DNA from: Macrostomum lignano
Lineage: Eukaryota
NCBI GenBank assembly: GCA_002269645.1
Contig: NIVC01001068.1
Location: forward strand, 1 to 64,000
DNA: 64,000 nucleotides
Reading direction: 5' to 3'
A program made the position numbers and the translations under genes. A model generated the notes under the pieces. The model was not told the origin of the DNA. It was given only the letters and a program-made list of their open reading frames with translations, and made no database searches. Within the stretch, counting starts at the first letter, position 1; each line of letters starts with the position of its first letter. Below, piece after piece: positions 20,087 through 64,000 of this stretch.

Positions 20087-21923
20087 ATGAATCGAGAGCA
20101 TCTTAGTCGTCGGCACGATGTCGTCATTATCGGAGCTGGAATAGCCGGACTGACGGCGGCCCACCTCCTGCTGAAGGCTAGGCCAGACCTGGACCTGCTG
20201 GTGCTGGAGGCGAAGGACAGAATTGGTGGACGCCTGTTGTCGAAGCCGGTCAGATGCGCTGATGGAGAGGTTCGACAGTGGTGAGACGACGGGCGACGAT
20301 TTCAAAGTTTTTTGAGAGGCCTGCTTTAAAACAAGATTATTTGATATGCTTAGTGTTGAAAAATTACTATTGTCAACGCATGTAAACAAATGCTAGTTGT
20401 TTGATAAGTCCTATATATTCGTTTATATTTTTCAATGGTACGGGATCAGTTCCAGATCGTTAACAATCATCATTAGCAGAGCATACATGCATTAGTCCAG
20501 ATGTACGAACGTGCAATAATCTTTTTTGGAAGGTACACGAAAAAAATCAAAACGTTATATAATCTGAAAGAAATTAATTTGACTACTTCTTTCTTACCAG
20601 GTGTTTTGGTGGCACCTGGGCTTCTAAAACCCAGTGTAACCTTCTTGAGCTGCTAAAAGAGATGAAGATTGAGACGTTCGAACAGTACCGCCAGGGTATC
20701 AAGTTTGTTGAGATGGACAACACTGTCACTCAATATGAGGGCGGGGTGCCAACAATCGGTCTGCTAAACCTTCTAGACTTGAACCTCACTCTGCAAGCGC
20801 TCGAACGGCAAGCGACGGGGTTGAAGACCAGCCAGCCGGATCAGGTTGAACGTATGGATCAGGACTCGGTGAAGAGTGCTGTGCAGAGACTCACATTCAG
20901 GTGAGAGACAGACAAACTAATTAAGAGTCTTGTACCGCAAAATGAGTATCCCGCAAGCATGTTAAATTTATTATTTATTCCGCCACAAACAGAGAGGAGA
21001 GCGAGCTCTTCCTCCGAGGCGTTGTAGCGCCAGTGCTGCAAGGCTCTGACGAGCGAATCTCACAGATTCATGCGCTAAACGTCGCTCAATCTAGCGGTGG
21101 ATTCGAGAAGCTCTTCAAGGACGCCCAGGAATTGCGCGTTGACGGCGGCGCGCAACGCATCACCGAGCGGCTGGCTGAATCGGTTGGACCGGCTAGATTG
21201 CGTCTTGGCTGGGCCGTCGCCGAGATTCGTCAGAGTACAGACAACGATGATGAGAATTTTCGAGGAGAAGTATGCCTGCTGTCTGAATCCGGCGACCAGT
21301 TAACTAGCTGCCTAGTACTCTGCACGCTGCCACTCGCTAGTCTCAACTTGGTGAAGTTTCGCCCAACTCTACCCCCGTCCAAGCAGCAATTGGCCAACAA
21401 CTGTCCGACCGTGTCGCACACGCTGAAGACGATCATCACCTATGCGAACGCGTTCTGGCGTCAAGCTGGTTTCTCCGGAGAGATTCTCTCGTGCCAGGGT
21501 CAGCCAATGAACCCGCAGAGCGTCAGCGGCTCGATCAGCGTGTGCTACGACGCCTGCAGCAGGGACGGAGCGCACCCAGCTTTAGTTGTTCTGGCCTCGT
21601 CGGGCGCCGACCGTACTGCAAGTCCCAACGAGCGTCGCGAAGCTCTGCTAAACCATCTGGCCAGATTCTTCCCCAAAGAGGATGTGTTTAACTTTATCGA
21701 CTACGCTGAGCACAGTTGGTGCTCGGAGCCGTATCATAGCACTTGTATGGCGTCGGCTGTGTCAGTGGGTTGCGGCAGCCTGCTACTGTCCCCAGAGCTG
21801 TCCAAACCGTTTCACAGGGTGCACTTTGCGGGCAGCGATATGGCTGACGAATGGATCGGCTACATGGAGGGTGCTGTTCAGAGTGCGAAGCGTGCAACCG
21901 CCGAGCTTTTGCAAGCGTTGTGA
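20087..21923 (+). CDS. Flavin-containing monoamine oxidase-like protein. Exons 20087-20280, 20601-20900, 20993-21923; 474 aa.
   Basis: [10 protein letters not shown] dinucleotide-binding motif; [10 protein letters not shown]; QELRVDGG; K..ITY..AFW; [13 protein letters not shown]. Splice phases are consistent. Confidence 0.92.
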
Positions 21924-31674: not shown

Positions 31675-34290
31675 GGTTTACCCCCGATTCGCCGAATCCC
31701 GATTCTCCGATTCCCGATTCGCCGATTCCCGATTCGCCGAATTCCCGATTCGCCGAATTCCTGACTCGCGGAATTCCTGATTTGCCGAATTCCTGACTCG
31801 CCGAACCTTCCAGTTTCTAATTGTGCGACGCCACAGGTGGAAGTGGATGCATGCCAGGTGGGCCGGGTTGTGATTGGCCAGCTCTGGAGGCTCTCCTGCC
31901 TAGCCCTGTCCGCACGCTCGTATATAAGGGCCAGATTTCCAGTTGAGGCAGTCACACTTTTGTAAATACAACTCAACACGTGAGCCAGTGACCTCAAGAC
32001 AACATAAGTTATGGCTCAGGCCGGACCCGCACCCGAAAGGGCCGAATTCGTAGTGAGCGAACGGGAGGCCAGCTTCTGCTCCGCGATGGCTACCTGTATC
32101 GCGTGGACAAAAAGAGTCTGGTGGCTTCCTACTACAAGTGCCGAGAGGAACGCTGCAATTCTCGGGTCAATGTTGAAGACGGGTTTGTGACGTCGACGTC
32201 TGGAAGTCACGAACACCCGCCGCCATCGGCCGCCGCTCTCAAGCGCAAAGCTTTTGCCGAGACAGTGAAGGCGCAGGCACAAGAATCTGCCCTTCCAATT
32301 GCACGGATCTACCGAGACCAGGTGGCGACAAATGCTGCCGAGGGTGCAGATCTCGCCACGGTGCCCACGTTCTCCAGCGTCAAGACGGCCGCATACCACG
32401 CTCGACTTGCGGTCGTTCCACCGTTGCCTCCGACAGCTCAGCACTACGAGGTCGAGGCGGAGGTGTTCAACACTGCCACCGTTTTGGACTCGCGCGCATT
32501 GAATCTGGTGGGACCACGGGTCGTTGGATTCACGACGGACGCTCTGCTGGCAAGACTTGGCGAGTGCGAACGGTTGCAGATTGATGGTACTTTCAGCTGC
32601 TGCCCTGAGATCTTCTACCAGCTGTTCATCATTCACGGCAAGGTCCTCGGTGCGTGGGAGCCTCTTGTCTTCTTTCTGCTTCCCGCAAAGGATCAGAGAA
32701 CGTATGAGACATGCTGAGGTTCGTCGAGTAACAGGTCATGACTGCATGGCAACGACCATTCTGACGGACTTCGAAGCCGGAAGCATGAACGCAGCGACTG
32801 GTAGGTGGCCACACTATCCGCAACCTGCTTTGCGAGGCTGCTTTTTCCACTTCTGCCAGTGCATCCTACGCCGCGTTGCCTCCGCTGGATTGAAGGCAGC
32901 GTACGAAGGTGACCCCGAGGTGAGGGCAACCGTTCGGCGTCTGATGGCGCTGCCGTTGATGCCACTGGCTGGAGTGAAAGATGCCTTCCAGTTCATCCTC
33001 GGAGACATGCCTGCCCAAGCCCATCCGAATCATGCTCAAGTGGTCGCATTGATGGACTATGTGACTACTACTTGGATCGACGGGGCCGCACAGTTTCAAC
33101 CGCCACTGTGGAGCCACTACGGTGAAGACGACGACAGGACCATCAACGCCGCCGAGGGTCGTCATCACGCCCTCAACCAAGTCGCGGGGAACCATCGTCT
33201 CAACGTTCATTCTTTTGTGCGCGAGGTTGTGAAGGAGCTCCGGAACTGCCAGACACGCATTCAGCAACGAGCCGCTGGCAATGTCACCAGTCGGCAAAGC
33301 TCTCGCGCGAAGAGGCTGGCAACAACAATTGCAAGACTCCGGGACGAGTTTTAAGCAGGCCAGAGAACACTGGAGCAGTTCCTTGACGCTTGTGGCTACC
33401 AGCTGCAGCTTTGAACATTTCTCTTGCCGTGACATAATAACCATGCAGCTATGAACATTTCTCTTGCCGTGACATAATAACCATGCAGCTTTGAACATTT
33501 CTCTTGCCGTAACATAATGCCTTGGTTTGCTCTGAGGCGTGCCTTTGAGCAGACCAGCTTTAGTACCCCCGGGGGGTTGGTTTTGGGCCTTTGTGCGTGC
33601 GCGGGGTTGGCGTGGGGGGGGGGGGTTGTGCGTTGTGTGTCTCTACCCTCCTTTGTGCAGCGGCCCTCCCCCCTCCGCCTGCTGAGGGTTTTTAATGCCC
33701 CGTTTTCTCTCAGGAGCTCCTGCGTTCTCGCTCTCGCTAAATTTTTTTTATTCTTCTTCTTTTAAAAATAAAATGCCGTGTTCGTCACCAAATATACAAG
33801 CATTCGAGTCTTGTTGGAGGCTGTTGCTTCGCCTCCGTGTTCTCGCCAACCTCGGTGTTCCTCTGTTTCTCTGGGTTCCTTCCGGGCCGGGTACTAATAA
33901 GATTTTTGCCACAAGAGTTTATTACATATTTTCTATCCTTTTATCTGAACTTTCCGCAGCTGTTGTCACCTACAGTAATAATAATAATACAAATAATACA
34001 ATTTTAATACAATCCAAAATACAATATTACAATAATATAACTACAATAATAATTGTCTCCAAGTCTGATCCCCGGAAGCACTTGTTCAGCTGATGGTGCG
34101 CCTGTGTGTGTGCGTGTGTGAGTGGACGGTCAATGGGGTAATCGGCAAATCAGGAATTCGGCAAATCAGGAATTCGGCAAATCAGGAATTCGGCAAATCA
34201 GGAATTTCGGCGAAGCAGGAATTCGGCGAGTCAGGAATTCGGCGAGTCAGGAATTCGGCGAATCGGGAATCGGCGAATCGAGGGTAAACC
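31675..34290 (+). mobile_element. Mutator-like (MULE) DNA transposon, full length (2616 bp)
   Basis: Termini GGTTTACCC...GGGTAAACC; TIRs built from tandem GCCGAATTCC(T/C)GA subrepeats; 8-bp TSD GTCTAAAC (31667-31674, 34291-34298); internal transposase. Confidence 0.92.
32011..33414 (+). pseudogene. FLYWCH + MULE DDE transposase, interrupted (frameshifts near 32062 and 32708, in-frame TAA at 33352)
   Basis: GGQLLLRDGYLY..YKC..C..HEH (FLYWCH); IDGTF; TDFE; CFFH; RTINAAEGRH. The frame continues past the TAA as AGQRTLEQFLDACGYQLQL*. TATA at 31921. Confidence 0.85.
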
Positions 34291-35277
34291 GTCTAAACAG
34301 GTGTAATTACTGTCTAAACAGGTGTAATTACTGTCTAAACAGGTGTAATTACTATCTAAACAGGTGTATCAAATCAGATTGTGATTAAATTTCAACGGGT
34401 TCAAGCTATTATTTTATATGTGGTTCTTCGTTAACGCAATTTCTTTTAAAAGTACAAGCCAAAGTCCAAGTATGCAATAGTTAAAAAAAAGTGCAGGCAA
34501 ACAGCGGGTGATGTATGCTGTACTGAACAGAAAACCAGTTCCACTTGTTTACCGAATCCGTAGAATTCCCAACAAAAAAACTAGAAGTAACTATAAATGC
34601 AGCCGCTTACTGAACAATCAAGTTCTCATGTAAACACATTTGCGTCGATAGAAACTGCAGTCTTACCTTGCTGGAGAGGCCTTACTTGCTAGTTATTAAT
34701 CACGATAATTGTAAAAGATGTTGATGCGACTTAGAAGAGCTCGGCTTTTCCAGTTTTTAATATACTTTCTGTCTGTCTCTGTCTGTCTTTTTGCTTTCCA
34801 GAATGCTCTCTCCCCCGCTATCTTGGATCAACGCATATGCACTAGTAGCTCGTACGTACTGGAAACCACGCGCACTATCGCGAGGGAGACAGGCACAGCT
34901 GGGAAACGCATCTTGAAATCAATGCCATCTTGCTTTCCCTTGGCTGAAGCGGAGAAGGCGACCCAGGCAAGACGTTTGTCGAGGGACAGGAATTGGAGGG
35001 TCTTGGGGTTTCTCTGGGGCAAGGAGGTACACCGGGTTAGCCCTTTGGCTGCCCTTTCTGTCCTCGCTTATAGCGGCAGAAAAAGAAGATGGTTCATCCA
35101 CACGGACAATACTGTTTCTTCTCTTGTCGGTGCAGTCTGGGGTATAAATAAACAAGGAGTGATGCAGATATTTCAGGATGTAGTGACTTAATTAGTTTGC
35201 GAGCTCATGATTCAATTAAGGAATGAGTTTTCAGGTGAGATCATGAGTGAGATTAAGAGCCAGAGAGGGAGGTTAGG

Positions 35278-36771
35278 GTGTGAGGTAGCTAAGGAGAGAG
35301 ATAATGAAGTGAGGTAGCCAAGGAGGGAGATAGGGGAGTGAGGTAGCCAAGAAGGGAGATGGGGGAGTGAGGTAGCCCAGAAGGGAGATGGGGGAGTGAG
35401 GTAGCCAAGGAGGGAGATGTGGGAGTGAGGTAGCCAAGGAGGGAGATGTGGGAGTGAGGTAGCCAAGGAGGGAGATGTGGGAGTAAGGTAGCCAAGGAGG
35501 GAGATGGAGGAGTGAGGTAGCCAAGGAGGGAGATGGGGGAGTGAGGTAGCCAAGGAGGGAGATGTGGGAGTGAGGTAGCCCAGAAGGGAGATGGGGGAGT
35601 GAGGTAGCCAAGAAGGGAGATGGGGGAGTGAGGTAGCCAAGGAGGGAGATGGGGGAGTGAGGTAGCCCAGAAGGGAGATGGGGGAGTGAGGTAGCCAAGG
35701 AGGGAGATGTGGGAGTGAGGTAGCCAAGGAGGGAGATGTGGGAGTGAGGTAGCCAAGGAGGGAGATGGAGGAGTGAGGTAGCCAAGGAGGGAGATGGGGG
35801 AGTGAGGTAGCCAAGAAGGGAGATGGAGGAGTGAGGTAGCTGAGAGGGAGATGGAGAAGTGAGGTAGCCAAGAAGGGAGATGGGGGAGTGAGGTAGCCAA
35901 GAAGGGAGATGGGGGAGTGAGGTAGCCAAGAAGGGAGATGGGGGAGTGAGGTAGCCAAGAAAGGAGATGGGGGAGTGAGGTAGCCAAGAAGGGAGATGGG
36001 GGAGTGAGGTAGCCAAGAAGGGAGATGATGGAGTGAGGTAGCCAAGAAGTGAGATGATGGAGTGAGGTAGCCAAGGAGGGAGATGATGATGTGAGGTAGC
36101 CAAGGAAAGAGATGATGGAGTGAGGTAGCCAAGGAGGGAGATGGGGGAGTGAGGTAGCCAAGGAGGGAGATGGGGGAGTGAGGTAGCCAAGAAGGGAGAT
36201 GATGGAATGAGGTAGCCAAGAAGTGAGATGATGGAGTGAGGTAGCCAAGGAGGGAGACGATGGAGTGAGGTAGCCAAGGAGGGAGACGATGGAGTGAGGT
36301 AGCCAAGGAGGGAGATGGGGGAGTGAGGTAGCCAATGAGGGAGATGGGGGAGTGAGGTAGCCAATGAGGGAGATGGGGGAGTGAGGTAGCCAAGGAGGGA
36401 GATGGGGGAGTGAGGTAGCCAAGGAGGGAGATGGAGGAGTGAGGTAGCCAAGAAGGGAGATGATGGAATGAGGTAGCCAAGAAGTGAGATGATGGAGTGA
36501 GGTAGCCAAGGAGGGAGACGATGGAGTGAGGTAGCCAAGGAGGGAGACGATGGAGTGAGGTAGCCAAGGAGGGAGATGGGGGAGTGAGGTAGCCAATGAG
36601 GGAGATGGGGGAGTGAGGTAGCCAATGAGGGAGATGGGGGAGTGAGGTAGCCAAGGAGGGAGATGGGGGAGTGAGGTAGCCAATGAGGGAGATGGGGGAG
36701 TGAGGTAGCCAATGAGGGAGATGGGGGAGTGAGGTAGCCAAGAAGGGAGATGGGGGAGTGAGGTAGCCAAG
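35278..36771. repeat. 29-bp G-rich minisatellite, about 51 copies
   Basis: Direct tandem copies; source of the LGYLTPPSP ORFs. Confidence 0.95.
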
Positions 36772-37115
36772 TAGGCAGATTTTTACTGTAGTGCAAACTG
36801 ATTTTTCGACTAAGCGCCTTTCTATCCATCCCAATCAGAAGTGTCAGTGCGTGTAGATCCCCTGAAATGCCGAAAATTTGCATCAATACGCTCCATCTAC
36901 GCTAATCTCCGAGCTGCCCATCGGATGAACAACCCAATCCAGTTCAGTCACGTGCTTACCAGTTCCCCAGCCGGTCTCTGCGCTGGACTTGCCAAGGTGG
37001 AGAAAAAAATCTGGTATGGACCTGGCAGCCCCACAGAGACAGTTCATTTTTCTAGTCATCCCAGCGGGGGGTGGGGAGTCCGCACCCGCCAATGGGGAGG
37101 GTCAGGCTTTATTTA

Positions 37116-40890
<3,775 letters not shown>

Positions 40891-41931: not shown

Positions 41932-43691
41932 ATGGTGATGGACATCGGACTGTTTGGCACGCTGCGCAAGTTGAAGATCGCCAGCTCCACCCTGCGCATT
42001 GATGACGACTTTATTGACAGGTTGAATCATTACTACACGGCTATCGTGATTGTTGTGTTCACGTTTATCATTTCGGCTAAGCAGTATGTTGGTGAGTTCA
42101 GGTCGCTATTAATTACTTGAACTTAACTGAAGTTAACAGACATCTTGGATGCTCTGTTTAGATGGGAAATTTCTCACCAACTGCAAAGATGTCTAAATAG
42201 AACCATTTCTTTTATAATTATAGGGTAGGAGAATGCTCAAACCATTTCTAACGGCGAACTCTCAGCTCCCCTGCACTCTCCCCTCACTCCTCTCTCCATC
42301 TCTCCTTCCCATCCTCTCTACCACTTGTAAGTTCCCTCTCTCCCTTCTCCGGACAAAGGAAAAGGTGACTTGTCTTTCTGCTACAGCTAATAGTTCCTAA
42401 AATAGGTACTAAAAGAAGTACCCTCTGTGGATACAGCGACAAAAAGTTACGCCCGTCGAAAGACTCTTTGAAACAGAAACTGTCCTCTCCAAGCAGACAA
42501 TCGTGCTCAGAGTTTCAGAAGTTCCATATTTACAGGCATTATTTTTATAGATGTCCCTGACTGTAGGCCCTCTAAAATCTCAAACCCGCAGGTCAGCCAC
42601 TGCAGTGCTGGGTGCCAGCTCAATTCACCACTGCAATGGAGCAGTACGCTGAGAACTACTGCTGGATTCAGAACACCTACTACCTGCCTTTGCGTCACAC
42701 AATACCTAAAGAGCACAGTCATCGTAACGACAGAAAAATTGGCTACTACCAATGGGTGCCATTCATGCTAGTCTGCCAGGCCCTGCTATTCTACCTGCCT
42801 AACATTGTGTGGCGCCTGCTCAACTGGGAGAGCGGCATTAACTTCCGCGCAATCAATCGAATGACAAGCGACGCGCAGAACGTGAACCCGGACAGTCGGG
42901 GCAAAACCATTCGCGCCATCGCCAGGCACATCGAGGACGCGCTGCGTTATCAGAAACGCGAGCGTCGGGACTGTCTTGGCCAGCTCAGGCAGGCTGCCAA
43001 TAAGTTTCTGCTCTGCTCCAGGCGTCACGGCGTCTTCCTTAGTCTGATGTACTTTCTCGTCAAGCTGCTCTACATCTGCAATTGTGTTTGTCAGTTCTTT
43101 TTGCTCAACGCCTTCCTAGGTAGTCCGTATCAGTTTTTCGGTTGGGAACTGTTAATTAACATGATATCGGGCGTCACCTGGGAGGAGTCGGGCCAATTCC
43201 CGAGGGTGACAATGTGCGACTTTGAAATCCGCGTGTTGGGCAACCTGCACCGGCACACGGTTCAGTGCGTCCTAGTGATCAACCTGTTCAACGAAAAGAT
43301 CTTCGTGTTTCTCTGGTTCTGGCTGTTTCTAGTTGCCGTAGCTACGGTGATGTCGTTCTTCACCTGGCTGTACAAGCACGCCCTGCCACCGATGAGGCAC
43401 CAGTTCGTCCTGAGCAGCCTCCGCATGGCCGATCCAAGCGTTAGACGCGACTCACGCGACGTCGCTGTCAGGCACCAGCTAGAGAACTTTGTGAGCCAAA
43501 ATCTGCGCTGCGACGGGGTGTTCGTGCTGCGCATGCTCGCCATCAATGCTGGAGAAATAATTTCGGCCGAAGTTGCTAGGGAGATGTGGCTGTCCTACAG
43601 AGGAGACTGCAAACGGCCTTTGCAAACAGGCAATGCTAACGGCCCGGATCAGCACATGATGGGAGCTGGAGACGATCAAAGTGTGGTGTGA
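41932..43691 (+). CDS. inx: Innexin gap-junction protein. Exons 41932-42091 and 42592-43691; 419 aa.
   Basis: DDFIDRLN; KQYVGQPLQCWVP; ENYCW; YYQWVPF; FPRVTMCDF; QCVLVIN..NEKIFVFLWFW; four extracellular Cys. Confidence 0.96.
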
Positions 43692-46316: not shown

Positions 46317-48481
46317 TTAGTACTCGTAAGTTTCTGAAATTGTTCAGTAATTGTGTGAGTCTTTCGACAATAAATTTTATCCCACAAGCGCTTGTCAATA
46401 CCGATTTTATTTACCGTTCTCTACATCAACGAGTGCAGCTCCACCAGGAGACACTGCAGTGAGTTGACTGCTGTCCCGGAAGCTGGAACTGGCTGATGGC
46501 GACGGATCGCTTTGCAGAGTTTGATGCTGACCTGTTGGTAAAATAAATTTAGTTGAGATGCTGGTATATACTCAACAACATTAAAAAGTCGCCACCTTTG
46601 AGAGTGCGCAGTAAATTCTAGCTCAGTTTTGACTTTTGAGTGACGCAACTTGCGTCACACGACGCAGAGTTGGGCTGGGTGAGGAGGGATCGGGAAGAGC
46701 GGAGGGCGAAGACTGGATGGATTCAAGCTTCCGCCCGGTTTTCATTGCTTTACTTTACCTGCACTCTCAAAAAGTGGCGACCACAGACGGAATCTTCTGT
46801 GATGGCGAATTTTCGATGTTTCTAGGTATACACCACACAAGCGTGCCAGTACTGTACGCATGCATGCAGTCATACATGCAGCGTGTACAGCGGCCTTCTT
46901 GACTTTCTAAACTACAGTACATACGGACGCTTACTAGTAGTAGTGCAAACAGCCAAACGGTCCATTATCTTTGTTTGTCCCGGCTGCAAAGCGCAGACGG
47001 TTTGTTGTTTGCCGTCTACTGCACGACCGCGGTGACTGTTTCCGTTCTTTCTCGCCCGAAGCGCCAGAGTGACAGCGGCTGATAGGAGCAGCACCAGGAG
47101 CAGGCAGCTTGTGACCGCTGTTGCTATCAGGGTGAGCCTTGGTTAGTGGCGAAGGCAAAGGCTAATTATTAACATTCGAGGTTAGGATAGTGTGAAAGCG
47201 ATCGTCTTGCATCCTCACTTAGCTCAAAGACATCAAAGACGTTTTCGCAAGATAGTGGCGCACATAGGGTTAGCCCCAGGGGACCTGATAGTTGCAGGAG
47301 GGCTGTGGTCTTTTGTTCATCGTCTTCGTGCATTGTCCTATAACCTGTGTTGAAGCAGTTCTACCAGCGCGCCTATACAGTAAGCAGCCAAGCACTCATA
47401 CACACGCTGACACAGAATATATACGCTCACATCTTAGGGCACCCCCACAAATGCATATAGAGGAATGTATGCAAATCTAGGAATTTACACTAATGATTGC
47501 TCACTTCATATTCTCTAGCTGCTGTTGATGGTGTGGCTCAGTCGAAGAGGTTTCCAAATCATTGCTCGTACTATAGTCTTTAGATGCTAGCGGAGTTTCT
47601 GTAGTGTAGCAACAGTACCTGCGTGTGCAAATTGTTTCCTTGTCTTTTAATTGATGTTATTATGTGTGCACGTATGATCAGGAATGCCATGAAACGTAGG
47701 ACATTGTTTCACTTTGTCTCACCTGGTGCCGTTCGCGAATTGGCAGCAGGACAAGCCGGAGACTTTGCCGAATGTCAAATCTCGCCATCCGCACGAGAAG
47801 CCCGTCTGCCAGATGTTATCAGCGTCTTTATAGCCGGAGCAGAATACTGCGGTTAGTTGGTTGGTTGGTTGGTTGTTTGCTTCGTTGGTTGTTTAGTTGT
47901 TTGATTGGTTCTTTGGTTATTGGGTTGGTCGGTTGTTCGCTTGGTTGGTTGTTTGGTTGGTTGGTTGGTTGGTTGTTTGGTCGTTTAATTGTTTGGTTGG
48001 TTCTTTGGTTATTGGGTCGTTTGGTTATGTGCTTGGTTGGTCGTTTGCTTGGTTGGTCGTTTGCTTGGTTGGTCGTTTGCTTGTTTTGTTTTTTGGCCGG
48101 TTCTTTGGTTGTAAGCTTGTTTGGTTGTTTGGTTGTTTAGTTGTTTGGTTGTTTAGTTGTTTGGTTGTTTGGTTGTTTGGTTGTTTGTTTGGTTGGTTGT
48201 TTGTTTGGTTGGTTGTTTGGTTGGTTGGTTGTTTGGTTGGTTGTTAATTTGGTTGTTGGTTAGTTCGCTATTTGGTTGTTTGGTTTGTTATCATGTTGGT
48301 TATCTGTTTGGTTGGTTATTTTGGTTGCTAGACTTTGCTATCATATTTTTTCAAGATTAAAATAGATACAACTACAACGCTAGAGAAAGATATCGATGAG
48401 TTAGCATATGCAGATCAAACCAAAAAGATTTATTAAAAGTTGCCTGCATGACTGATGAAGCTTACCTTCCTCTCGATTCAT
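46317..48481 (-). CDS. Shisa-like (SHISAL2/FAM159-type) single-pass protein. Exons 48481-48466, 47846-47723, 47618-47505, 47137-46935, 46531-46415, 46333-46317; 196 aa.
   Basis: Spliced protein MNREEVFCSGYKDADNIWQTGFSCG..SCCQFANGTRYCC shows the C-C-CC-CC Shisa pattern; TM LTLIATAVTSCLLLVLLLSAAVTLAL; all five introns are GT-AG and phase-consistent (591 nt). Confidence 0.82.
47852..48325. repeat. (GTTG/GTTT)n low-complexity tract in Shisa-like intron 1
   Basis: Direct reading. Confidence 0.92.
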
Positions 48482-49465
48482 TGCGCAGCCGGTTTACCCA
48501 ACCAAAAACTCCTTGAACTGGCGTCGGCTTGTCTGAGGAAATTTTACTTCCAACTTTTTAACTCTGCCGAGTTTATAAATCCCCTCTGCCCGTGCCGCTT
48601 CGGCGAAATCGATTCGAAAGCTTTTCGTTTCTCTTTTGGTTCCAGCGATGTGCAGACGATGGGACTACCGCACCTGCCGCAACCGCCAATCTGATTGCCG
48701 AGCGGTCTGAAATTTTGTTAAAACTGCAAAAAATTGTCAAGAAATCTAGGAGGGGGGGGGAATTCACCTGTGCATTTTTATTTGGGCATCGGTTTTTGCA
48801 ATGCCCGGAATCCAGGTAGACATGCTGACAGTCCCGCCACAAAGCGCTGCTGGATTGGGTCCTGTAAATGGCTCGACGAGGGGTAACGGGGGCTGGCGAG
48901 GTTGAAATGTCCAACAGATTGCAGCCTGTAGACTGAAAGCCTGCATTGAAGCATGACTTCGATGGGATGTGGAGGATGGGAAGTACTCGGTGCTTCACGA
49001 CCCCACCCTGCCCCCCCCCATCCCAGGCAGGAAAGTCGCTGTCATTTTTTCCCTTTCCTTTTTTGCGCCGTTGGATTCGCCCAACATAATTTATTGCCCG
49101 CGACAAAAAAGCTTTTTTGATGTTGCAAGCGTTGGCAGTTGCTAGCTGGGAGACTACAGTTCACACCTCTCTTTGGCTTTTCCGTTAGTAACAAACAGGG
49201 AATGATGGTACAGATAAATACATTTTATACTCACCTGAAGTTTTGTAACTCTGTCATCTATCCACCGAAGTGCGACATGGCACTCACTAGAGACTGTAGC
49301 TAGACACCGGATCCCAATCCCGATGCCGTTGAGCACTTTGAGTAGTGCAGTTATCAATAGATATTAAAAAATCCAGCTGTGAACTCTGTTTTCAATTCTG
49401 TGCCACCAGATTCTCAACACCATTTTGTAGTGACTAAAAATTTGCTAAAGTTAGCGCTACCTCAG

Positions 49466-51370
49466 GACTGACACTCCAGACTCTACATGCACTGACACCT
49501 CTGACACTCAAGACTCTACATGCACTGACACCTCTGACACTCCAGACTCTACATGCACTGACACCTCTGACACTCCAGACTCTACATGCACTGACACCTC
49601 TGACACTCCAGACTCTACATGCACTGACACCTCTGACACTCAAGACTCTACATGCACTGACACCTCTGACTCTCCAGACTCTACATGCACTGACACCTCT
49701 GACACTCCAGACTCTACATGCACTGACACCCCTGACACTCCAGACTCTACATGCACTGACGCCTCTGACACTCCAGACTCTACATGCACTGACACCTCTG
49801 ACACTCCAGACTCTACATGCACTGACGCCTCTGACACTCCAGACTCTACATGCACTGACACCTCTGACACTCCAGACTCTACATGCACTGACGCCTCTGA
49901 CACTCCAGACTCTACATGCACTGACACCCCTGACACTCCAGACTCTACATGCACTGACACCCCTGACACTCCAGACTCTACATGCACTGACGCCTCTGAC
50001 ACTCCAGACTCTACATGCACTGACACCTCTGACACTCCAGACTCTACAGCCTCTGACACTCCAGACTCTACATGCACTGACACCTCTGACACTCCAGACT
50101 CTACAGCCTCTGACACTCCAGACTCTACAGCCTCTGACACTCAGACTCTAGATACACTGACACCTCTGACACTCCAGACTCTACAGCCTCTGACACTCAG
50201 ACTCTAGATACACTGACACCTCTGACACTTCAGACTCTACAGCCTCAGACACTCAGACTCTAGATACACTGACACCTCTGACACTCAGACTCTAGATACA
50301 CTGACACCTCTGACACTTCAGACTCTAGATACACTGACACCTCTGACACTCCAGACTCTACAGCCTCTGACACTCAGACTCTAGATACACTGACACCTCT
50401 GACACTTCAGACTCTACAGCCTCTGACACTCAGACTCTAGATACACTGACACCTCTGACACTTCAGACTCTACAGCCTCAGACACTCAGACTCTAGATAC
50501 ACTGACACCTCTGACACTTCAGACTCTAGATACACTGACACCTCTGACACTCCAGACTCTACAGCCTCTGACACTCAGACTCTACAGCCTCTGACACTCA
50601 GACTCTAGATACACTGACACCTCTGACACTTCAGACTCTACAGCCTCAGACACTCAGACTCTAGATACACTGACACCTCTGACACTTCAGACTCTACAGC
50701 CTCAGACACTCAGACTCTAGATACACTGACACCTCTGACACTTCAGACTCTAGATACACTGACACCTCTGACACTCCAGACTCTACAGCCTCTGACACTC
50801 AGACTCTAGATACACTGACACCTCTGACACTTCAGACTCTACAGCCTCTGACACTCAGACTCTAGATACACTGACACCTCTGACACTTCAGACTCTACAG
50901 CCTCTGACACTCAGACTCTAGATACACTGACACCTCTGACACTTCAGACTCTACAGCCTCAGACACTCAGACTCTAGATACACTGACACCTCTGACACTT
51001 CAGACTCTACAGCCTCAGACACTCAGACTCTAGATACACTGACACCTCTGACACTTCAGACTCTACAGCCTCAGACACTCAGACTCTAGATACACTGACA
51101 CCTCTGACACTTCAGACTCTACAGCCTCAGACACTCAGACTCTAGATACACTGACACCTCTGACACTTCAGACTCTACAGCCTCAGACACTCAGACTCTA
51201 GATACACTGACACCTCTGACACTTCAGACTCTACAGCCTCAGACACTCAGACTCTAGATACACTGACACCTCTGACACTTCAGACTCTACAGCCTCAGAC
51301 ACTCAGACTCTAGATACACTGACACCTCTGACACTTCAGACTCTACAGCCTCAGACACTAGATGCACTGA
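49466..51370. repeat. Composite minisatellite: 33-bp unit (ACTGACACCTCTGACACTCCAGACTCTACATGC) grading into a 56-bp unit
   Basis: Direct reading; the unit changes around 50050-50150. Confidence 0.95.
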
Positions 51371-52198
51371 CAATGACCATGTTTTCTGTATCAAGAATTG
51401 TGCAGTTCTAAAATAAATATCTATCTGTGCAACTCGAATCCTTTTTTAATCCAGGGGGCCAAATCTGGAACGCGACGAAAACTTTTTATTTTCTTTTAAT
51501 TATCTGTATAAGCATATTACAGAACCAGTGGGCAATCTGTAGGTCTAGCTGGGAAAAAATACAATATTTTCTCTGAAAGTTAACTCTATAGTTCTGCTCG
51601 AATCTATTGTAATAAAATCGAGTTGATAAACTGATGCAGAAAACTTGTAAATTGCAAAGTCGTATTATTCATGTCATGTAAGTCATAGTCAAAGTAAGGC
51701 TCTGTACACTAAGGATTACGGGATTAACGACTGCATGTGGTCATTAGGCCAGTCTGGTAACTGGAGATGGGTGCTTTATAGTTACAAGCCTTTCTAGTCT
51801 CTTGAGCAGTCTTAATCAGCTTTGAGATTCGAGTGGGTGGCCTGCCTTGACAAGTTAGTAGAGAGCTAACTCTCGGATAAAAGGGAAGGGGGTCGTTTCG
51901 AGTAAGTCGGAGCAAAGGTACTAATACAGTGTGAGTGTACATGTACTCAAAGCGTTTGCAAAGAGACGAGTGACGGTCTATACTACGGATAATAACAATG
52001 AGCTATTCTAAGTAATCGGGAAAATTTCTGATCAAAGAAAACTGAATTGCATGTAGGAATATTATGTCTAGAATATTTCCCGGCATTAGTGAGAAGCAAT
52101 AGTAAAACAATGAAAATAAATATTTTCAAGTACCTAAACAATAAACAGGCGGTTAGCTAGTGACAAATACTCGATCAGTGACATAACGAGCGACATAA

Positions 52199-52727
52199 TG
52201 AGTGACAAAGAGACAAAGAGTGACAAAAAGACAAAGAGTGACAAAAAGACAAATAGCGACAAAGAGATATAGAGTGACAAAGAGACAAAGAGTGACAAAG
52301 AGACAAAGAGTGACAAAGAGATATAGAGTGACAAAGAGACAAAGAGTGACAAAGAGATGATAAAGAGTGACAAAGAGACAAAGAGTGACAAAGAGATATA
52401 GAGTGACAAAGAGACAAAGAGTGACAAAGAGATATAGAGTGACAAAGAGACAAAGAGTGACAAAGGGATAAAGAGTGACAAAGAGACAAAGAGTGACAAA
52501 GAGATATAGAGTGACAAAGAGATATAGAGTGACAAAGAGACAAAGAGTGACAAAGGGATAAAGAGTGACAAAGAGACAAAGAGTGACAAAGAGATATAGA
52601 GTGACAAAGAGATACAGAGTGACAAAGAGATATAGAGTGACAAAGAGACAAAGAGTGACAAAGAGATATAGAGTGACAAAGGGATAAAGAGTGACAAAGA
52701 GATAAAGAGTGATAAAGAATGACAAAC
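52199..52727. repeat. 18-bp minisatellite (GAGTGACAAAGAGACAAA)
   Basis: Direct reading. Confidence 0.94.
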
Positions 52728-52839: not shown

Positions 52840-57210
<4,371 letters not shown>

Positions 57211-59677: not shown

Positions 59678-62600
59678 TCAGCACTGCGGCTCCCCAGCAC
59701 TGGGTGAATTGCTCGGACAATAATTATGTATCCTGGATCTCAACATTCGATGCCTCTCCGATGTCCGATTGAACGAATTCAATAAGAAATCTGTCACTTT
59801 CTGGTACAGATGCGGCCAAGATGACGTCATCCGGTGATTGTCGTCTGGATAGGTCTGATTGTTGACAATGCGCATTATGTTTCAAAAGTTCATATTTTTA
59901 ACCAAAACAACTTTTTTGTAAAAATATCTAAAATAAAACAACACTCACAAGAAATTCAAAGTCGATGTGCTCACTGACGAGAACTTTTGCCAGCTGAGCA
60001 CTGTGCTGGTAGTGTACTTTAGCTGGAATTGCCATTGATTGAGTGAAAAGCGTACTTTTTAGAATATTTGTTTTGGAAGATAAGAAGATTTATTTATGTT
60101 CCAATGATACTTACTGTCTCCAGTTCCATGGGCGATTAGAATATTTTTATTCCAAAAATTGACCGCCACACGAGAGACGTTTGTTCTCTGAAAAAAAAAT
60201 AAGAAAACAAATCACATTTCTCACTTTTGAAAACTTCTTTTTCGTACGCCCTACAATCTACACTACTGCTACGAGTAGTGAAAACCGCAGTGCCAATTTT
60301 ACCTTGTAGTTTTCCGAAGTTTGCTCGGATTTTATCCCCAAAAATCGCTCAGTGTAGGCGGCATCTGCAGGAATTTGAGGAGCAAATATTGATTCTATCG
60401 AATATAGAACTAGGAGAAGAAAAAAACATCTACTACTAAGTACCTAAGCTGTTTGAGGAATGCCTGCCATTATTGACTTGATGGAGATGTTTTCTTTGTA
60501 AATGCGAGTCCTAATTAACAGTTTCAGGGACTGCAATTAAGGAGCAACAAGTCCAATGGATCTATAAAAGATCTATTAGCTAAGAACAGAATCCATGAAG
60601 ATTCTGAGACCATTGCTCTGGATCGAAAAGCTATTAAAGATTTCTGTGCCTCTTGGGCAATCGATCTATCAGATTAAGGTTTGCAATTAATTTTTGGCCG
60701 TTAACTGACCTATAAATCGACAATTTTTATTACCCTATGAATACTCACTCTGTTAGAATGTCTTTCTTCGTGAGTCATTTTAGATGGCATTGCTCAGTTT
60801 GTGATAATAGCGCCTGACATTTATGCTACACTGGTCCTGACACCCCCTGACACTCACAGTATCCCTGACACTCACAATATCACCTGACACTCTCAAGATC
60901 CCCTGACACTCACAATATCCTATGACACTCACAATATCCCTGACACTCACAATATCCCTGACACTCACAATATCACCTGACACTCACAATATCCTATGAC
61001 ACTCACAATATCCCTGACACTCACAATATCCCTGACACTCACAATATCACCTGACACTCACAATATCCTATGACACTCACAATATCCCTGACACTCACAA
61101 TATCCCTTGACACTCACAATATCCCCTGACACTCACAATACGAGTATCCCATGACACTCACAATATCCCTTGACACTCACAATATCCCCTGACACTCACA
61201 ATATCCTATGACACTCACAATATCCCTGACACTCACAATATCCCTGACACTCACAATATCACCTGACACTCACAATATCCTATGACACTCACAATATCCC
61301 TGACACTCACAATATCCCTGACACTCACAATATCACCTGACACTCACAATATCCTATGACACTCACAATATCCCTGACACTCACAATATCCCTGACACTC
61401 ACAATATCCTATGACACTCACAATATCCCCTGACACTCACAATATCCTATGACACTCACAATATCCCTGACACTCACAATATCCTATGACACTCACAATA
61501 TCCCCTGACACTCACAATATCCTATGACACTCACAATATCCCTGACACTCACAATATCCCCTGACACTCACAATATCCTATGACACTCACAATATCCCTT
61601 GACACTCACAATATCCCCTGACACTCACAATACGAGTATCCCATGACACTCACAATATCCCTTGACACTCACAATATCCCCTGACACCTCACAACACCCC
61701 CTGACAGAATTACCGTAATAATGATAGTCAGTAATAGGCGCCACGGCTACAGCAGTATCGAAGTACGTATTATTGACGTTGTCATGGTGACCGAGCATTT
61801 GCAGCGCTAGGCCGGCTCCGTGGTCCCAGCCGATGGCCGCTATGCAGGACTTGTTGACGTACTGCAGCTGGGCTAGCTGTCCGAGCGAGTCTATCTGGTC
61901 TTCCAGTTCGGCCGAGGCAAATCCTGCGCCTCGGATGTCGAATAGAAATTTCGAGCCCCGATTCCGGGTGCCCCTGGCGTCCACGCTCACGGATATAACG
62001 AACAGGCTGCTGGCCAGGTAGTGCTGCCAGCCCAGAGTGAACTGCCGGGTGGCCAGCTGGGCTGTCGGGCCGGCGTGGCTGCGAAGCGGAAGGGAACAGG
62101 GACAGCAGAGTGACAACAGAGTGACAGCAGAGTGACAGCAGAGTGACAGCAGAGTGACCCTAGAGGGACACCAGAGTGACACCAGAGTTACATTCGGTAT
62201 CGTGGGACGGGAGGGTGACCGAATGGGGGCAGAAGAGTGACAGATCGAAGGGACAAGAGAGTGACAGATCGGATGGACAGGAGAGTGACAGATCGGAGGG
62301 ACAGGAGAGTGACAGATCGAAGGGACAAGAGAGTGACAGATCGGAGGGACAGGAGAGTGACAGATCGGATGGACAGGAGAGTGACAGATCGGATGGACAG
62401 GAGAGTGACAGATCGAAGGGACAGGAGAGTGACAGATCGAAGGGACAGGAGAGTGACAGATCGGAGGGACAGGAGAGTGACAGATCGGATGGACAGGAGA
62501 GTGACAGATCGAAGGGACAGGAGAGTGACAGATCGAAGGGACAGGAGAGTGACAGATCGGATAGACAGGAGAGTGACACATCGGAGGGACAGGAGAGTGA

Positions 62601-64000
62601 CAGATCGGATGGACAGGAGAGTGACAGATCGAAGGGACAGGAGAGTGACAGATCGAAGGGACAGGAGAGTGACAGATCGGATAGACAGGAGAGTGACACA
62701 TAGGAGGGACAGGAGAGTGACAGATCGGATGGACAGGAGAGTGACAGATCGGATGGACAGGAGAGTGACAGATCGGAGGGACAAGAGAGTGACAGATGGG
62801 TGACAGATGAACGGACAGGAGAGTGACAGAGGAGTAAAAACAGAGGTAAATGCTTAAAATAGGTGTCAATGATAACAAAAACTCACACATGCATGAGCAG
62901 AGGGTACTGGCTAATATGCGACTCGTTCAGCTGTTTAGGCAGCAGCAGTTTGGCATTGACCGACAGCGGGTCGGCTCTGGACTCCAGCGTAGTTTTGAGG
63001 CGCAATCGCAATTGTCTGAATTCCACTCTGGGCAAATTCCGACCAATCAAATTGCGGGAGAATTCCAAATTGTCTTCCACTATTAGGGCTAGCGAGTATT
63101 TTTCTGGGGGAAATTTAATAAATCACCAATATAAGTAAAACAAATTTTGTTGTTAAGTTTGATTAAACAAAAAAATAAAATGCAATTGAGCTTACCTAAG
63201 TAACTGTTTTTCCTCACAAAGTATTTGTAAGGTTCTGGTCCCAGGCATTCTTGCAGCAACCAGTGACTGCTTTTGCTGAGTTCTGCCCGGTTGAATTCGC
63301 AGTTCAATAGTAGCTGATGAGAATCCGGACCAGCTCTTGGACAGGTGATGCAGTTGGCTGATGGAGCGTTCTCTGTGGCAGATATGCTGAAAGTTGATTG
63401 ATATGTTAGATGAAAATTACATTCTGGACATGGTAGACATTGATATGGTAGACATTGATAGCATTAATTTGATATGATAAGACATCGTGTTAGACTTAGA
63501 TTGAATATCTGATGTTAGACGTGGAGTGAGTGTCTGGTGTTAGATATGGAGCGAGTGTCTGGTGTTGGACATCGAGTGGGTGTTTGGTGTTGGACATCGA
63601 GTGAGTGTCTGGTGTTGGACATCGAGTGGGTGTTTGGTGTTGGACATCGAGTGAGTGTCTGGTGTTGGACATCGAGTGGGTGTTTGGTGTTGGACATCGA
63701 GTGAGTGTCTGGTGTTGGACATCGAGTGGGTGTTTGGTGTTGGACATCGAGTGAGTGTCTGGTGTTGGACATCGAGTGAGTGTCTGGTGTTAGACACGGA
63801 GTGTCTAATTCACAATAGCTTATATCAATCACGCTAAGAGCTCACACCTGTGCACGTGCATCTTAGTGGCGTCGTAGCTGTCGCTGTTGTCGTCTCGACA
63901 AGACAAAAAGTACAGCCGACCAGAACTGCCTGGCTGGCTCGGCTGACTCGGCAGCTCAAGGCGGAGCAATTCGGCCACGTCGTATTTCGCTGGCGAGATC
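59678..64000 (-). CDS. DPP6/DPP10-like inactive dipeptidyl peptidase (S9B), 3' part. Exons 64000(partial)-63848, 63386-63196, 63103-62887, 62078-61714, 60364-60303, 60187-60115, 60022-59949, 59854-59678.
   Basis: CITC..CLGP; KLLLP..YPLLMHVHAGPTAQ; SVDARG; IAAIGWDHGAG (nucleophile elbow); AVAPITDY; YTERFLG; AHGTGDTKVHYQHS; YPDDNH..HLY. All joins are GT-AG and phase-consistent. Confidence 0.92.
60836..61706. repeat. 18-20-bp minisatellite (TGACACTCACAATATCCC), intronic
   Basis: Direct reading. Confidence 0.95.
62100..62832. repeat. 24-bp minisatellite (GAGTGACAGATCGGATGGACAGGA), intronic
   Basis: Direct reading. Confidence 0.95.
63514..63800. repeat. 25-bp minisatellite with alternating A/B variants (50-bp higher-order unit), intronic
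   Basis: GGTGTTGGACATCGAGTGAGTGTCT alternates with GGTGTTGGACATCGAGTGGGTGTTT. Confidence 0.9.

What the first reader, a model, noticed from the sequence alone, without database searches (positions are those of the whole stretch)
46317..48481. Flatworm-type Shisa-like (SHISAL2/FAM159) gene that the ORF track misses
Seen: six small exons give MNREEVFCSGYKDADNIWQTGFSC...CCQFANGTRYCC, a Ser/Thr stalk, one TM and a tail ending ETYEY. An in-frame TAA upstream of the ATG shows there is no signal peptide. Known: vertebrate SHISAL2A/B start just before the first Cys, lack a signal peptide and have six Cys (as recalled, CSGY...CCGF...YCC). Shisa proteins are adaptors for receptors and channels (Frizzled/FGFR, AMPA receptors). 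Inference: an ancient signal-less Shisa adaptor in a lophotrochozoan, function undescribed.
Basis: partly seen in the sequence, partly recalled or inferred. Interest (0 to 1): 0.7.

Follow-up and report, generated by a model that had tools for sequence, protein, structure and literature searches.

The report
Divergent Shisa-like membrane protein gene
The window (the flatworm Macrostomum lignano) holds a real, small, spliced gene for a one-pass membrane protein. Its outer tip resembles the cysteine-rich domain of the Shisa family of receptor adaptors, which makes it an ordinary new member of a known family that public databases model and name poorly.

Summary
The six-exon minus-strand reading is in the sequence as described. 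All five introns are GT-AG, the frame stays open for 196 aa, and a TAA lies in frame 15 nt upstream of the ATG.

Two public Macrostomum lignano gene models (A0A1I8IR06, A0A1I8IYD2) match exons 2-4 and 2-5 with one conservative substitution. This fixes the organism and independently supports junctions 2|3, 3|4 and 4|5. One ends ...VENGK* at a stop that overlaps an AATAAA signal.

The Shisa reading is supported, but below the curated threshold:
- Pfam Shisa_N is the only cysteine-rich family hit (18.7-20.4 bits; cut-off 22).
- A vertebrate SHISAL2A profile gives 19 bits, reached by 0 of 20,000 composition shuffles and 1 of 20,000 Cys-fixed shuffles.
- hhalign gives 74% probability.
- The best PDB hit is the Shisa-3 domain 5m0w, at about the score a genuine fish SHISAL2A gets.

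The six cysteines, the lack of a signal peptide, the single transmembrane segment and the positive-inside tail all fit. The tail has no PY motif, the SHISAL2 subfamily motifs are absent, and nothing else among 1.84 billion proteins matches. SHISAL2 orthology is unproven.

Verdict: new member of a known kind, of low to moderate interest.

The parts
48466..48481 (-). Donor is AAG|GTAAGC.
   Evidence: The donor matches 8 of 9 positions of MAG|GTRAGT. An in-frame TAA lies at 48496-48494. Neither public model uses this exon as coding.
47847..48465 (-). Intron 1 (phase 1), mostly a (GGTTGGTT)n microsatellite at 47851-48327.
47723..47846 (-). Exon 2: VFCSGYKDADNIWQTGFSCGWRDLTFGKVSGLSCCQFANGT(R). Holds Cys 1-4 of the cysteine-rich domain and the NGT glycosylation sequon.
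   Evidence: It is the only six-frame segment of the window that hits the SHISAL2A profile (15.3 bits). It is present in P0001 and P0122.
47505..47618 (-). Exon 3: (R)YCC, which is Cys 5-6, followed by the acidic Ser/Thr-rich stalk.
   Evidence: Junction 2|3 is shared with P0001 and P0122.
46935..47137 (-). Exon 4: transmembrane segment (residues 86-111, 47136-47059), basic juxtamembrane RARKNGNSHRGR, and the first part of the tail.
   Evidence: AlphaFold gives a confident helix here (pLDDT 88-97). Junction 3|4 is shared with both public models.
46415..46531 (-). Exon 5: Ser-rich, probably disordered tail, QHQTLQSDPSPSASSSFRDSSQLTAVSPGGAALVDVEN.
   Evidence: Junction 4|5 is shared with P0122. 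P0001 instead reads through the exon-4 donor to a TAG at 46914-46912.
46406..46414 (-). Alternative 3' end. If the exon-5 donor is not used, the frame reads GGT AAA TAA (...VENGK*). The TAA (46409-46407) lies inside an AATAAA (46411-46406).
   Evidence: Read. This is the end used in P0122.
46317..46333 (-). Acceptor is caatttcag.
   Evidence: No independent support.
48572..48577 (-). TATAAA about 92 nt upstream of the ATG. There is no other ATG between it and 48481. An acceptor-like tttcctcag ends at 48533.
   Evidence: Read. These are positional inferences only.
48555..48706 (-). Stretch translated as coding in the public models (PLGNQIGGCGRCG...AELK). It is joined to exon 2 through the weak donor AAA|GTTGGA. 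More likely it is 5' UTR or promoter.
   Evidence: The donor matches only 5 of 9 consensus positions, and the frame hits a TAA 7 nt past it.
52840..53367 (-). Upstream neighbour: an intact 175-aa ORF with its own transmembrane segment and its own TGA stop. It is fused to the Shisa-like gene in A0A1I8IYD2. It is listed to mark the gene boundary and is not part of the gene.
   Evidence: About 4 kb of minisatellites lie between the two genes.

Best explanation
This is a separately transcribed Macrostomum lignano gene of five or six small exons. It encodes a single-pass membrane protein of about 190-196 aa.

Shown:
- The exon structure and the open frame.
- Six Cys arranged C-x15-C-x14-CC-x8-CC within residues 8-50.
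- An NGT sequon inside that domain.
- A Ser/Thr/acidic stalk.
- One transmembrane helix followed by a strongly basic stretch.
- No hydrophobic N-terminus.

Inferred:
- The transmembrane segment acts as a reverse signal-anchor (type III, N-terminus outside and C-terminus in the cytosol). This puts the cysteine-rich domain in the ER lumen or outside the cell, where it forms three disulfides.
- The domain is a divergent homologue of the Shisa N-terminal domain, of the six-Cys 'Shisa-like' kind.

Inferred by analogy only: like Shisa and Shisa-like proteins, it works as a small transmembrane adaptor or auxiliary subunit. It would bind another membrane receptor or channel through its ectodomain and transmembrane segment and tune that partner's maturation, trafficking or gating. 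Because the tail has no PY motif, it probably does not recruit NEDD4-type ubiquitin ligases. Any cytoplasmic signalling would go through the Ser-rich, probably phosphorylated, tail.
For: Gene model:
- Five GT-AG introns and an open frame.
- Exons 2-5 are reproduced in two public M. lignano proteins, with one conservative K-to-R change.

Homology:
- Pfam Shisa_N is the best hit and the only Cys-rich family hit. E = 0.0019 for the full protein and 5.7e-4 for the domain alone, both corrected for the 24,736 models.
- A profile of 52 vertebrate SHISAL2A domains scores 19.0 bits. This is reached by 0 of 20,000 composition shuffles and 1 of 20,000 shuffles with the Cys held in place.
- hhalign against a SHISAL2A alignment gives 74% probability, E = 2.7e-5, 42 columns and 31% identity.
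- BLASTP against fish SHISAL2A gives E = 0.004.
- MAFFT puts all six Cys plus Y(CxxY), F(GFxC), F(CCxF) and Y(YCC) in invariant columns.
- The top hit among 177,635 PDB sequences is the Shisa-3 domain 5m0w (14.5 bits). A genuine fish SHISAL2A gets 15.6 bits against the same chain.
- Exon 2 is the lone outlier in a six-frame scan of the window.

Topology: hydropathy and flanking charges; a confident AlphaFold transmembrane helix.

Family definitions: C*C*CC*CC pattern, single transmembrane segment, adaptor role (PMC5578492, PMC8621455, PMC11399591).
Against: - The Pfam score is below the curated gathering score (22 bits).
- phmmer of P0001 against 1.84 billion representative proteins finds only itself at E <= 0.001. 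The word-seeded searches add nothing. No bridging homologue exists in what was searched.
- AlphaFold models of the domain are weak (pLDDT <50 alone, 60-70 with a SHISAL2A alignment). Foldseek does not return 5m0w.
- The tail has no [LP]PxY motif and is not proline-rich (4 P in 85 residues).
- Introns inside the domain are not shared with fish SHISAL2A, whose domain sits in one exon.
- The start codon, the last exon and expression are not supported by any RNA evidence seen here.
Confidence: 0.62

Rival explanations
1. A real gene, but a lineage-specific orphan. Its small disulfide-rich ectodomain only mimics the Shisa cysteine spacing (convergence or chance) and has no shared ancestry or mechanism.
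For: - The score is below the Pfam gathering score.
- No homologue turns up in 1.84 billion proteins.
- The fold search is uninformative.
- The tail has no PY motif.
- The apparent match of the tail to the vertebrate CFMATVTT motif fails an HMM test.
Against: - Non-Cys residues also match (C.GY.DA....GF.C, CC.F, RYCC). Only 1 of 20,000 Cys-fixed shuffles reaches the observed score.
- Three independent libraries put Shisa first: Pfam, a self-built SHISAL2A profile, and PDB.
- The similarity to Shisa-3 equals that of a genuine SHISAL2A.
- The architecture and the lack of a signal peptide fit.
Confidence: 0.22
2. The cysteine-rich domain is internal. The true product is the long protein of A0A1I8IYD2 (396 aa), which starts in the upstream ORF at about 53324 and is spliced across 4 kb to 48706-48555 and then to exon 2.
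For: A public gene model has exactly this structure, and all of its exons are found in the window.
Against: - Both extra donors are weak (AAA|GTCTGA and AAA|GTTGGA, 5 of 9 consensus positions). The skipped donor AAG|GTAAGC matches 8 of 9.
- The first extra donor lies 8 nt before the upstream ORF's own TGA.
- The second lies 7 nt before a TAA in that frame.
- In the window the upstream ORF is an intact 175-aa protein with its own transmembrane segment. The P0122 N-terminus needs a frame change relative to it.
- About 4 kb of minisatellites separate the two genes.
- The fusion would place a disulfide-rich, N-glycosylation-site-bearing domain in the cytosol, judged by the charge flanks of both transmembrane segments. 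This last point is inference.
Confidence: 0.1
3. An activin-receptor-type (three-finger) ectodomain protein, as the UniRef name of A0A1I8IR06 says.
For: Only the database name 'Activin_recp domain-containing protein'.
Against: Pfam scans of both P0001 and the spliced model at E <= 10 list no Activin_recp hit. The protein has six Cys in a CC/CC pattern, not the three-finger pattern.
Confidence: 0.02
4. Not a functional gene: a decaying copy or a chance run of open exons.
For: No expression data were seen. The window is extremely repeat-rich.
Against: - Six exons with canonical sites and no frame disruption.
- A second genomic copy or allele encodes the same protein with one conservative change.
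- A family-specific domain is split over two exons in the correct phase.
Confidence: 0.04

Closest known systems
Vertebrate SHISAL2A/B (FAM159A/B)
   Same: - Methionine a few residues before the first Cys, with no signal peptide.
- Six-Cys C*C*CC*CC domain. The C1-C2 spacing is identical (16), and GFSC, CC.F and YCC are shared.
- One transmembrane segment.
- A phase-2 intron at the outer edge of the transmembrane segment in both. The positions cannot be aligned exactly.
- Function unknown in both (PMC8621455, PMC9655893).
   Different: - The flatworm protein has a 35-residue Ser/Thr stalk, whereas in SHISAL2A the transmembrane segment follows within about 10 residues.
- It lacks CCDDPxSFFPYE and the C-terminal CFMATVTT motif.
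- It has G rather than P after Cys2, and Q rather than G after the CC pair.
- It has two introns inside the domain, against none in fish.
- Orthology was not tested by phylogeny.
Canonical Shisa 1-9; Shisa-3 cysteine-rich domain (PDB 5m0w)
   Same: The C.G[YW].DA.....GF.C ... CC ... RYCC signature aligns over residues 6-56. The domain-stalk-transmembrane-tail layout is the same. [quoted passage not shown]
   Different: Canonical Shisa proteins have a signal peptide, eight Cys (C*C*CC*C*CC*C) and a proline-rich tail with PY or PDZ-binding motifs (PMC10531659). None of these is present here.
Other six-Cys Shisa-like (STMC6) proteins: WBP1, VOPP1, CYYR1, TMEM92, Drosophila CG15760
   Same: Six-Cys C*C*CC*CC ectodomain and short single-pass architecture (PMC5578492, PMC11399591).
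   Different: Those proteins carry several PPxY motifs that recruit NEDD4-family ligases (PMC11399591), and the flatworm tail has none. None of their Pfam families scored at E <= 10.

Membership tests
Shisa / Shisa-like superfamily (Pfam Shisa_N PF13908; STMC6) | Six conserved Cys in a C*C*CC*CC pattern in the N-terminal ectodomain | tested here: met
   Cys 8, 24, 39, 40, 49 and 50. All six fall in invariant columns with 24 SHISAL2A sequences.
Shisa / Shisa-like superfamily (Pfam Shisa_N PF13908; STMC6) | Score against Pfam Shisa_N at or above the gathering score (22 bits) | tested here: not met
   18.7 bits for the full protein (E 0.0019) and 20.4 bits for the domain alone (E 5.7e-4). It is the best hit and the only Cys-rich family listed.
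Shisa / Shisa-like superfamily (Pfam Shisa_N PF13908; STMC6) | A single transmembrane segment after the cysteine-rich domain | tested here: met
   Residues 86-111, KD19 2.5, +5 net charge after it. AlphaFold helix with pLDDT 88-97.
Shisa / Shisa-like superfamily (Pfam Shisa_N PF13908; STMC6) | Proline-rich cytoplasmic tail with PY ([LP]PxY) motifs | tested here: not met
   No [LP]PxY motif; 4 Pro in 85 tail residues.
Shisa / Shisa-like superfamily (Pfam Shisa_N PF13908; STMC6) | Fold of the solved Shisa-3 cysteine-rich domain (5m0w) | tested here: inconclusive
   By sequence, 5m0w is the top PDB hit (14.5 bits, E 0.36). The AlphaFold domain model has pLDDT of only 60-70, and Foldseek gives no match at E <= 0.001.
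Canonical Shisa 1-9 | Cleavable signal peptide | tested here: not met
   The N-terminus MNREEVFCSGYKD is not hydrophobic (KD9 max 0.34). No credible upstream exon in the right phase encodes a signal peptide.
Canonical Shisa 1-9 | Eight Cys, C*C*CC*C*CC*C | tested here: not met
   The ectodomain has only six Cys. The CCGxC cysteine is missing; the sequence is CCQFANGTRYCC.
SHISAL2 (FAM159) subfamily | Start codon a few residues before Cys1, with no signal peptide | tested here: inconclusive
That exon is not supported by RNA or by the public models.
SHISAL2 (FAM159) subfamily | Significant match to a SHISAL2A-only domain profile | tested here: met
   19.0 bits; reached by 0 of 20,000 composition shuffles and 1 of 20,000 Cys-fixed shuffles. 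hhalign 74%, E 2.7e-5.
SHISAL2 (FAM159) subfamily | Subfamily motifs: YCCDDPxSFFPYE running into the transmembrane segment, and C-terminal CFMATVTT | tested here: not met
   Replaced by YCCYTTETPLASKDY and a 35-residue stalk. An HMM of the C-terminal motif gives no hit in the tail.
SHISAL2 (FAM159) subfamily | Groups with SHISAL2 rather than Shisa1-9, SHISAL1, WBP1 or VOPP1 in a phylogeny | not tested
A 45-residue domain would in any case give little resolution.
SHISAL2 (FAM159) subfamily | Shared intron positions | tested here: inconclusive
   Fish SHISAL2A has its whole domain in exon 1, with a phase-2 intron at WWL|S at the edge of the transmembrane segment. The flatworm gene has two extra introns in the domain and a phase-2 intron one residue before the transmembrane segment.
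Activin-receptor-type ectodomain (PF01064), the UniRef name | Match to the Activin_recp profile | tested here: not met
   Not listed at E <= 10 for P0001 or for the spliced model.

The most novel reading that the evidence does not exclude
The gene is a true orthologue of vertebrate SHISAL2 (FAM159). If so, the signal-less, type III, six-Cys Shisa-like adaptor predates the split of protostomes and deuterostomes. Macrostomum lignano can be used for transgenesis and RNAi, so it could then serve to find the still unknown partner and function of the SHISAL2 proteins.
Probability: 0.2. Interest if true: 0.4.

Novelty: new member of a known kind. Interest (0 to 1): 0.25.

Why it matters
Shisa-family proteins control how Wnt and FGF receptors and glutamate receptors reach the cell surface and behave there. 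The six-Cys SHISAL2 branch has no known function even in mammals. A flatworm member would add a tractable invertebrate system and an outgroup for the family.

The gain is modest, however. Shisa-domain proteins are already recorded in insects and molluscs (PMC5578492, PMC5549309), and the assignment here sits below the curated threshold.

The practical result is a corrected annotation. The public entries for this locus are misnamed (A0A1I8IR06, 'Activin_recp') or fused with the upstream gene (A0A1I8IYD2).

Tried and rejected
1. The spliced protein could not be handed to the search of protein representatives or the look-up of encoding contigs. P0001 was used instead. It found only itself among 1.84 billion proteins and is on no indexed contig.
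2. A domain-only word-seeded search found no candidates.
3. AlphaFold on the single sequence was useless for the domain (pLDDT 46.6). With a SHISAL2A alignment the domain reached only 60-70. Foldseek against PDB returned only antibody and other noise, without 5m0w. This counts as uninformative, not as evidence against.
4. MAFFT suggested that the tail's DRLAVCTTTS resembles the vertebrate CFMATVTT motif. An HMM of that motif gives no hit, so the idea was rejected.
5. A search for an alternative first exon encoding a signal peptide in phase 1 between 47847 and 52840 found only translated minisatellite and one weak candidate with a poor donor. Rejected.
6. Intron-position conservation with fish SHISAL2A was inconclusive.
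7. There is no paralogue in the window.
8. Pei and Grishin 2012 (PMC3295595), the defining paper, is not held. Family definitions were taken from papers that cite it.
9. No paper on Shisa in flatworms was found. The single 'shisa' mention in a Macrostomum paper is a reference-list entry.
Full report
**What is there**

The exons are 48481-48466, 47846-47723, 47618-47505, 47137-46935, 46531-46415 and 46333-46317.

- Every intron begins GT and ends AG. Intron phases are 1, 2, 2, 1, 1.
- The 196-aa product is MNREEVFCSGYKDADNIWQTGFSCGWRDLTFGKVSGLSCCQFANGTRYCCYTTETPLASKDYSTSNDLETSSTEPHHQQQLENMKLTLIATAVTSCLLLVLLLSAAVTLALRARKNGNSHRGRAVDGKQQTVCALQPGQTKIMDRLAVCTTTSQHQTLQSDPSPSASSSFRDSSQLTAVSPGGAALVDVENETYEY.
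- The TAA at 48496-48494 is in frame with the ATG, and no AG lies between them.
- The bacterial-style ORF list shows only a 60-aa fragment of exon 4.

**Organism and independent gene models**

The only database relative is UniRef A0A1I8IR06 of Macrostomum lignano (P0001, 204 aa). It matches exons 2-4 with one conservative change. Its 90% cluster also holds A0A1I8IYD2 (P0122, 396 aa).

Mapping both back to the window shows the following:
- Junctions 2|3 and 3|4 are shared by both models, and 4|5 by P0122.
- P0001 reads through the exon-4 donor to TTTSKRPYVL*.
- P0122 reads through the exon-5 donor to ...VENGK*. That TAA (46409-46407) lies inside an AATAAA (46411-46406).
- P0122 also adds the upstream ORF (about 53324-52852) through AAA|GTCTGA.

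Neighbouring ORFs encode an innexin, an amine oxidase, a SET-domain protein and a peptidase S9 fragment. This fits an invertebrate animal genome. The taxonomy of M. lignano is given.

**Which ends are right**

- Its donor AAG|GTAAGC matches 8 of 9 consensus positions. The two donors in the public models match 5 of 9.
- One of those donors sits 7 nt before a stop in its own frame and the other 8 nt before. This is the pattern expected when a predictor stretches an ORF.
- In the window the upstream ORF 53367-52840 is an intact 175-aa protein with its own transmembrane segment and its own TGA. About 4 kb of minisatellites separate it from the Shisa-like gene.
- A TATAAA lies about 92 nt upstream of ATG 48481, and no other ATG lies between them.
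- A scan for an alternative first exon encoding a signal peptide found nothing credible.

The 3' end is open. ETYEY* requires a 17-nt last exon. ENGK* requires read-through to a stop that overlaps a poly(A) signal. Both are plausible, and no RNA data could be reached with these tools.

**Is the domain Shisa-like?**

*Pfam.* Shisa_N (PF13908) is the best hit and the only cysteine-rich family listed. It scores 18.7 bits (E 0.0019) for the whole protein and 20.4 bits (E 5.7e-4) for the domain alone. The gathering score is 22.

*Vertebrate SHISAL2A set.* I fetched genuine vertebrate SHISAL2A sequences.
- They start MS..C.SY.
- They lack a hydrophobic N-terminus.
- They carry six invariant Cys in the domain.

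*Profile tests against that set:*
- A profile of 52 distinct SHISAL2A domains scores the flatworm domain at 19.0 bits.
- None of 20,000 composition shuffles reached that score. Only 1 of 20,000 shuffles with the cysteines held in place did, so the residues between the cysteines contribute.
- hhalign gives 74% probability and E 2.7e-5 over 42 columns.
- BLASTP against the fish protein gives E 0.004.

*PDB.* Among 177,635 PDB sequences the top hit is the Shisa-3 cysteine-rich domain 5m0w, at 14.5 bits. It aligns C.G[YW].DA.....GF.C...CC...RYCC. A genuine fish SHISAL2A scores 15.6 bits against the same chain. The flatworm domain is therefore about as far from canonical Shisa as SHISAL2A is.

*Window scan.* Across all six frames of the window, exon 2 is the single outlier for the SHISAL2A profile (15.3 bits against 5.2 for the next). 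The missing YCC appears at the first codons of the next exon, in the right phase.

**What does not fit**

- Exhaustive phmmer of P0001 over 1.84 billion representatives found nothing else at E <= 0.001. A domain-only word-seeded search found no candidates.
- AlphaFold could not model the domain with confidence, and Foldseek did not return 5m0w.
- The tail has no [LP]PxY motif and is not proline-rich, unlike most Shisa and STMC6 proteins (PMC10531659, PMC11399591).
- The SHISAL2 juxtamembrane and C-terminal motifs are absent.
- Fish SHISAL2A has its whole domain in one exon. Only the phase-2 intron at the outer edge of the transmembrane segment is roughly comparable.
- The UniRef name 'Activin_recp domain-containing' is not reproduced by Pfam.

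**Mechanism**

Shown:
- An 85-residue N-terminal part with net negative charge, containing six Cys and an NGT sequon.
- A 26-residue hydrophobic helix.
- Then RARKNGNSHRGR (+5), followed by a Ser-rich tail.

Inferred:
- The topology is type III, with the N-terminus outside and the transmembrane segment acting as a reverse signal-anchor.
- The ectodomain is disulfide-bonded and glycosylated.

[quoted passage not shown] On that basis the protein most likely acts as a small adaptor or auxiliary subunit for another membrane protein. With no PY motif, it would do so without recruiting NEDD4-family ligases. The function of the closest vertebrate proteins is itself unknown (PMC8621455, PMC9655893).

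**Novelty and score**

Shisa-domain proteins are already noted in Drosophila (CG15760, PMC5578492) and in mussels (PMC5549309). The locus already has UniProt entries, although one is misnamed and the other fused to its neighbour. This is a new, divergent member of a known kind. The useful output is a corrected gene model and name.

- Interest: 0.25.
- Confidence that the gene is real: about 0.9.
- Confidence that the domain is a Shisa-type homologue: about 0.7.
- Confidence that it is an orthologue of SHISAL2: about 0.2.

Noticed in passing
window 52840-53367 (-): An intact 175-aa ORF (MATKPTEKGS...AAVGILLSACLFLLVFCFFAI...AAASKSEA*) with one transmembrane segment and no Pfam hit. UniProt A0A1I8IYD2 starts at a later ATG in another frame and fuses this ORF to the Shisa-like gene, which is probably a prediction artefact.
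   Followed up: partly
window, many sites, e.g. 35258-36780, 37282-38157, 38565-40440, 49468-51359, 52177-52726, 54114-55142, 60844-61706: The window is unusually dense in minisatellites and microsatellites: a 29-mer x52, (TGTC)x219, a 22-mer x84, 33/56-mers, (AGAGAGG)n and others. These explain the strong GC- and AT-skew blocks and many of the long spurious ORFs.
   Followed up: partly
window 47851-48327: Intron 1 of the gene is almost entirely a degenerate (GGTTGGTT)n array. On the plus strand it reads as long Trp/Leu/Val-rich pseudo-ORFs.
   Followed up: yes
window 42612-43691 (+): A 359-aa open frame with a full-length innexin match (288 bits). It is a gap-junction gene about 2.6 kb from the 3' end of the Shisa-like gene, on the opposite strand.
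   Followed up: partly
window 2727-3779 (+), 6881-7618 (+), 21033-21923 (+), 61625-62890 (-), 32524-33354 (+): Exon-sized ORFs with a weak PHD match, SET, flavin amine oxidase and peptidase S9 matches, and a weak MULE transposase match. The PHD and SET ORFs may belong to one histone-methyltransferase-like gene.
   Followed up: no
window 1-4000: A sharp composition step: GC is 0.31 in the first 2 kb and 0.61 in the next 2 kb.
   Followed up: no
UniRef A0A1I8IR06 (P0001): The public name 'Activin_recp domain-containing protein' is not reproduced by the current Pfam. The only cysteine-rich family hit is Shisa_N.
   Followed up: yes
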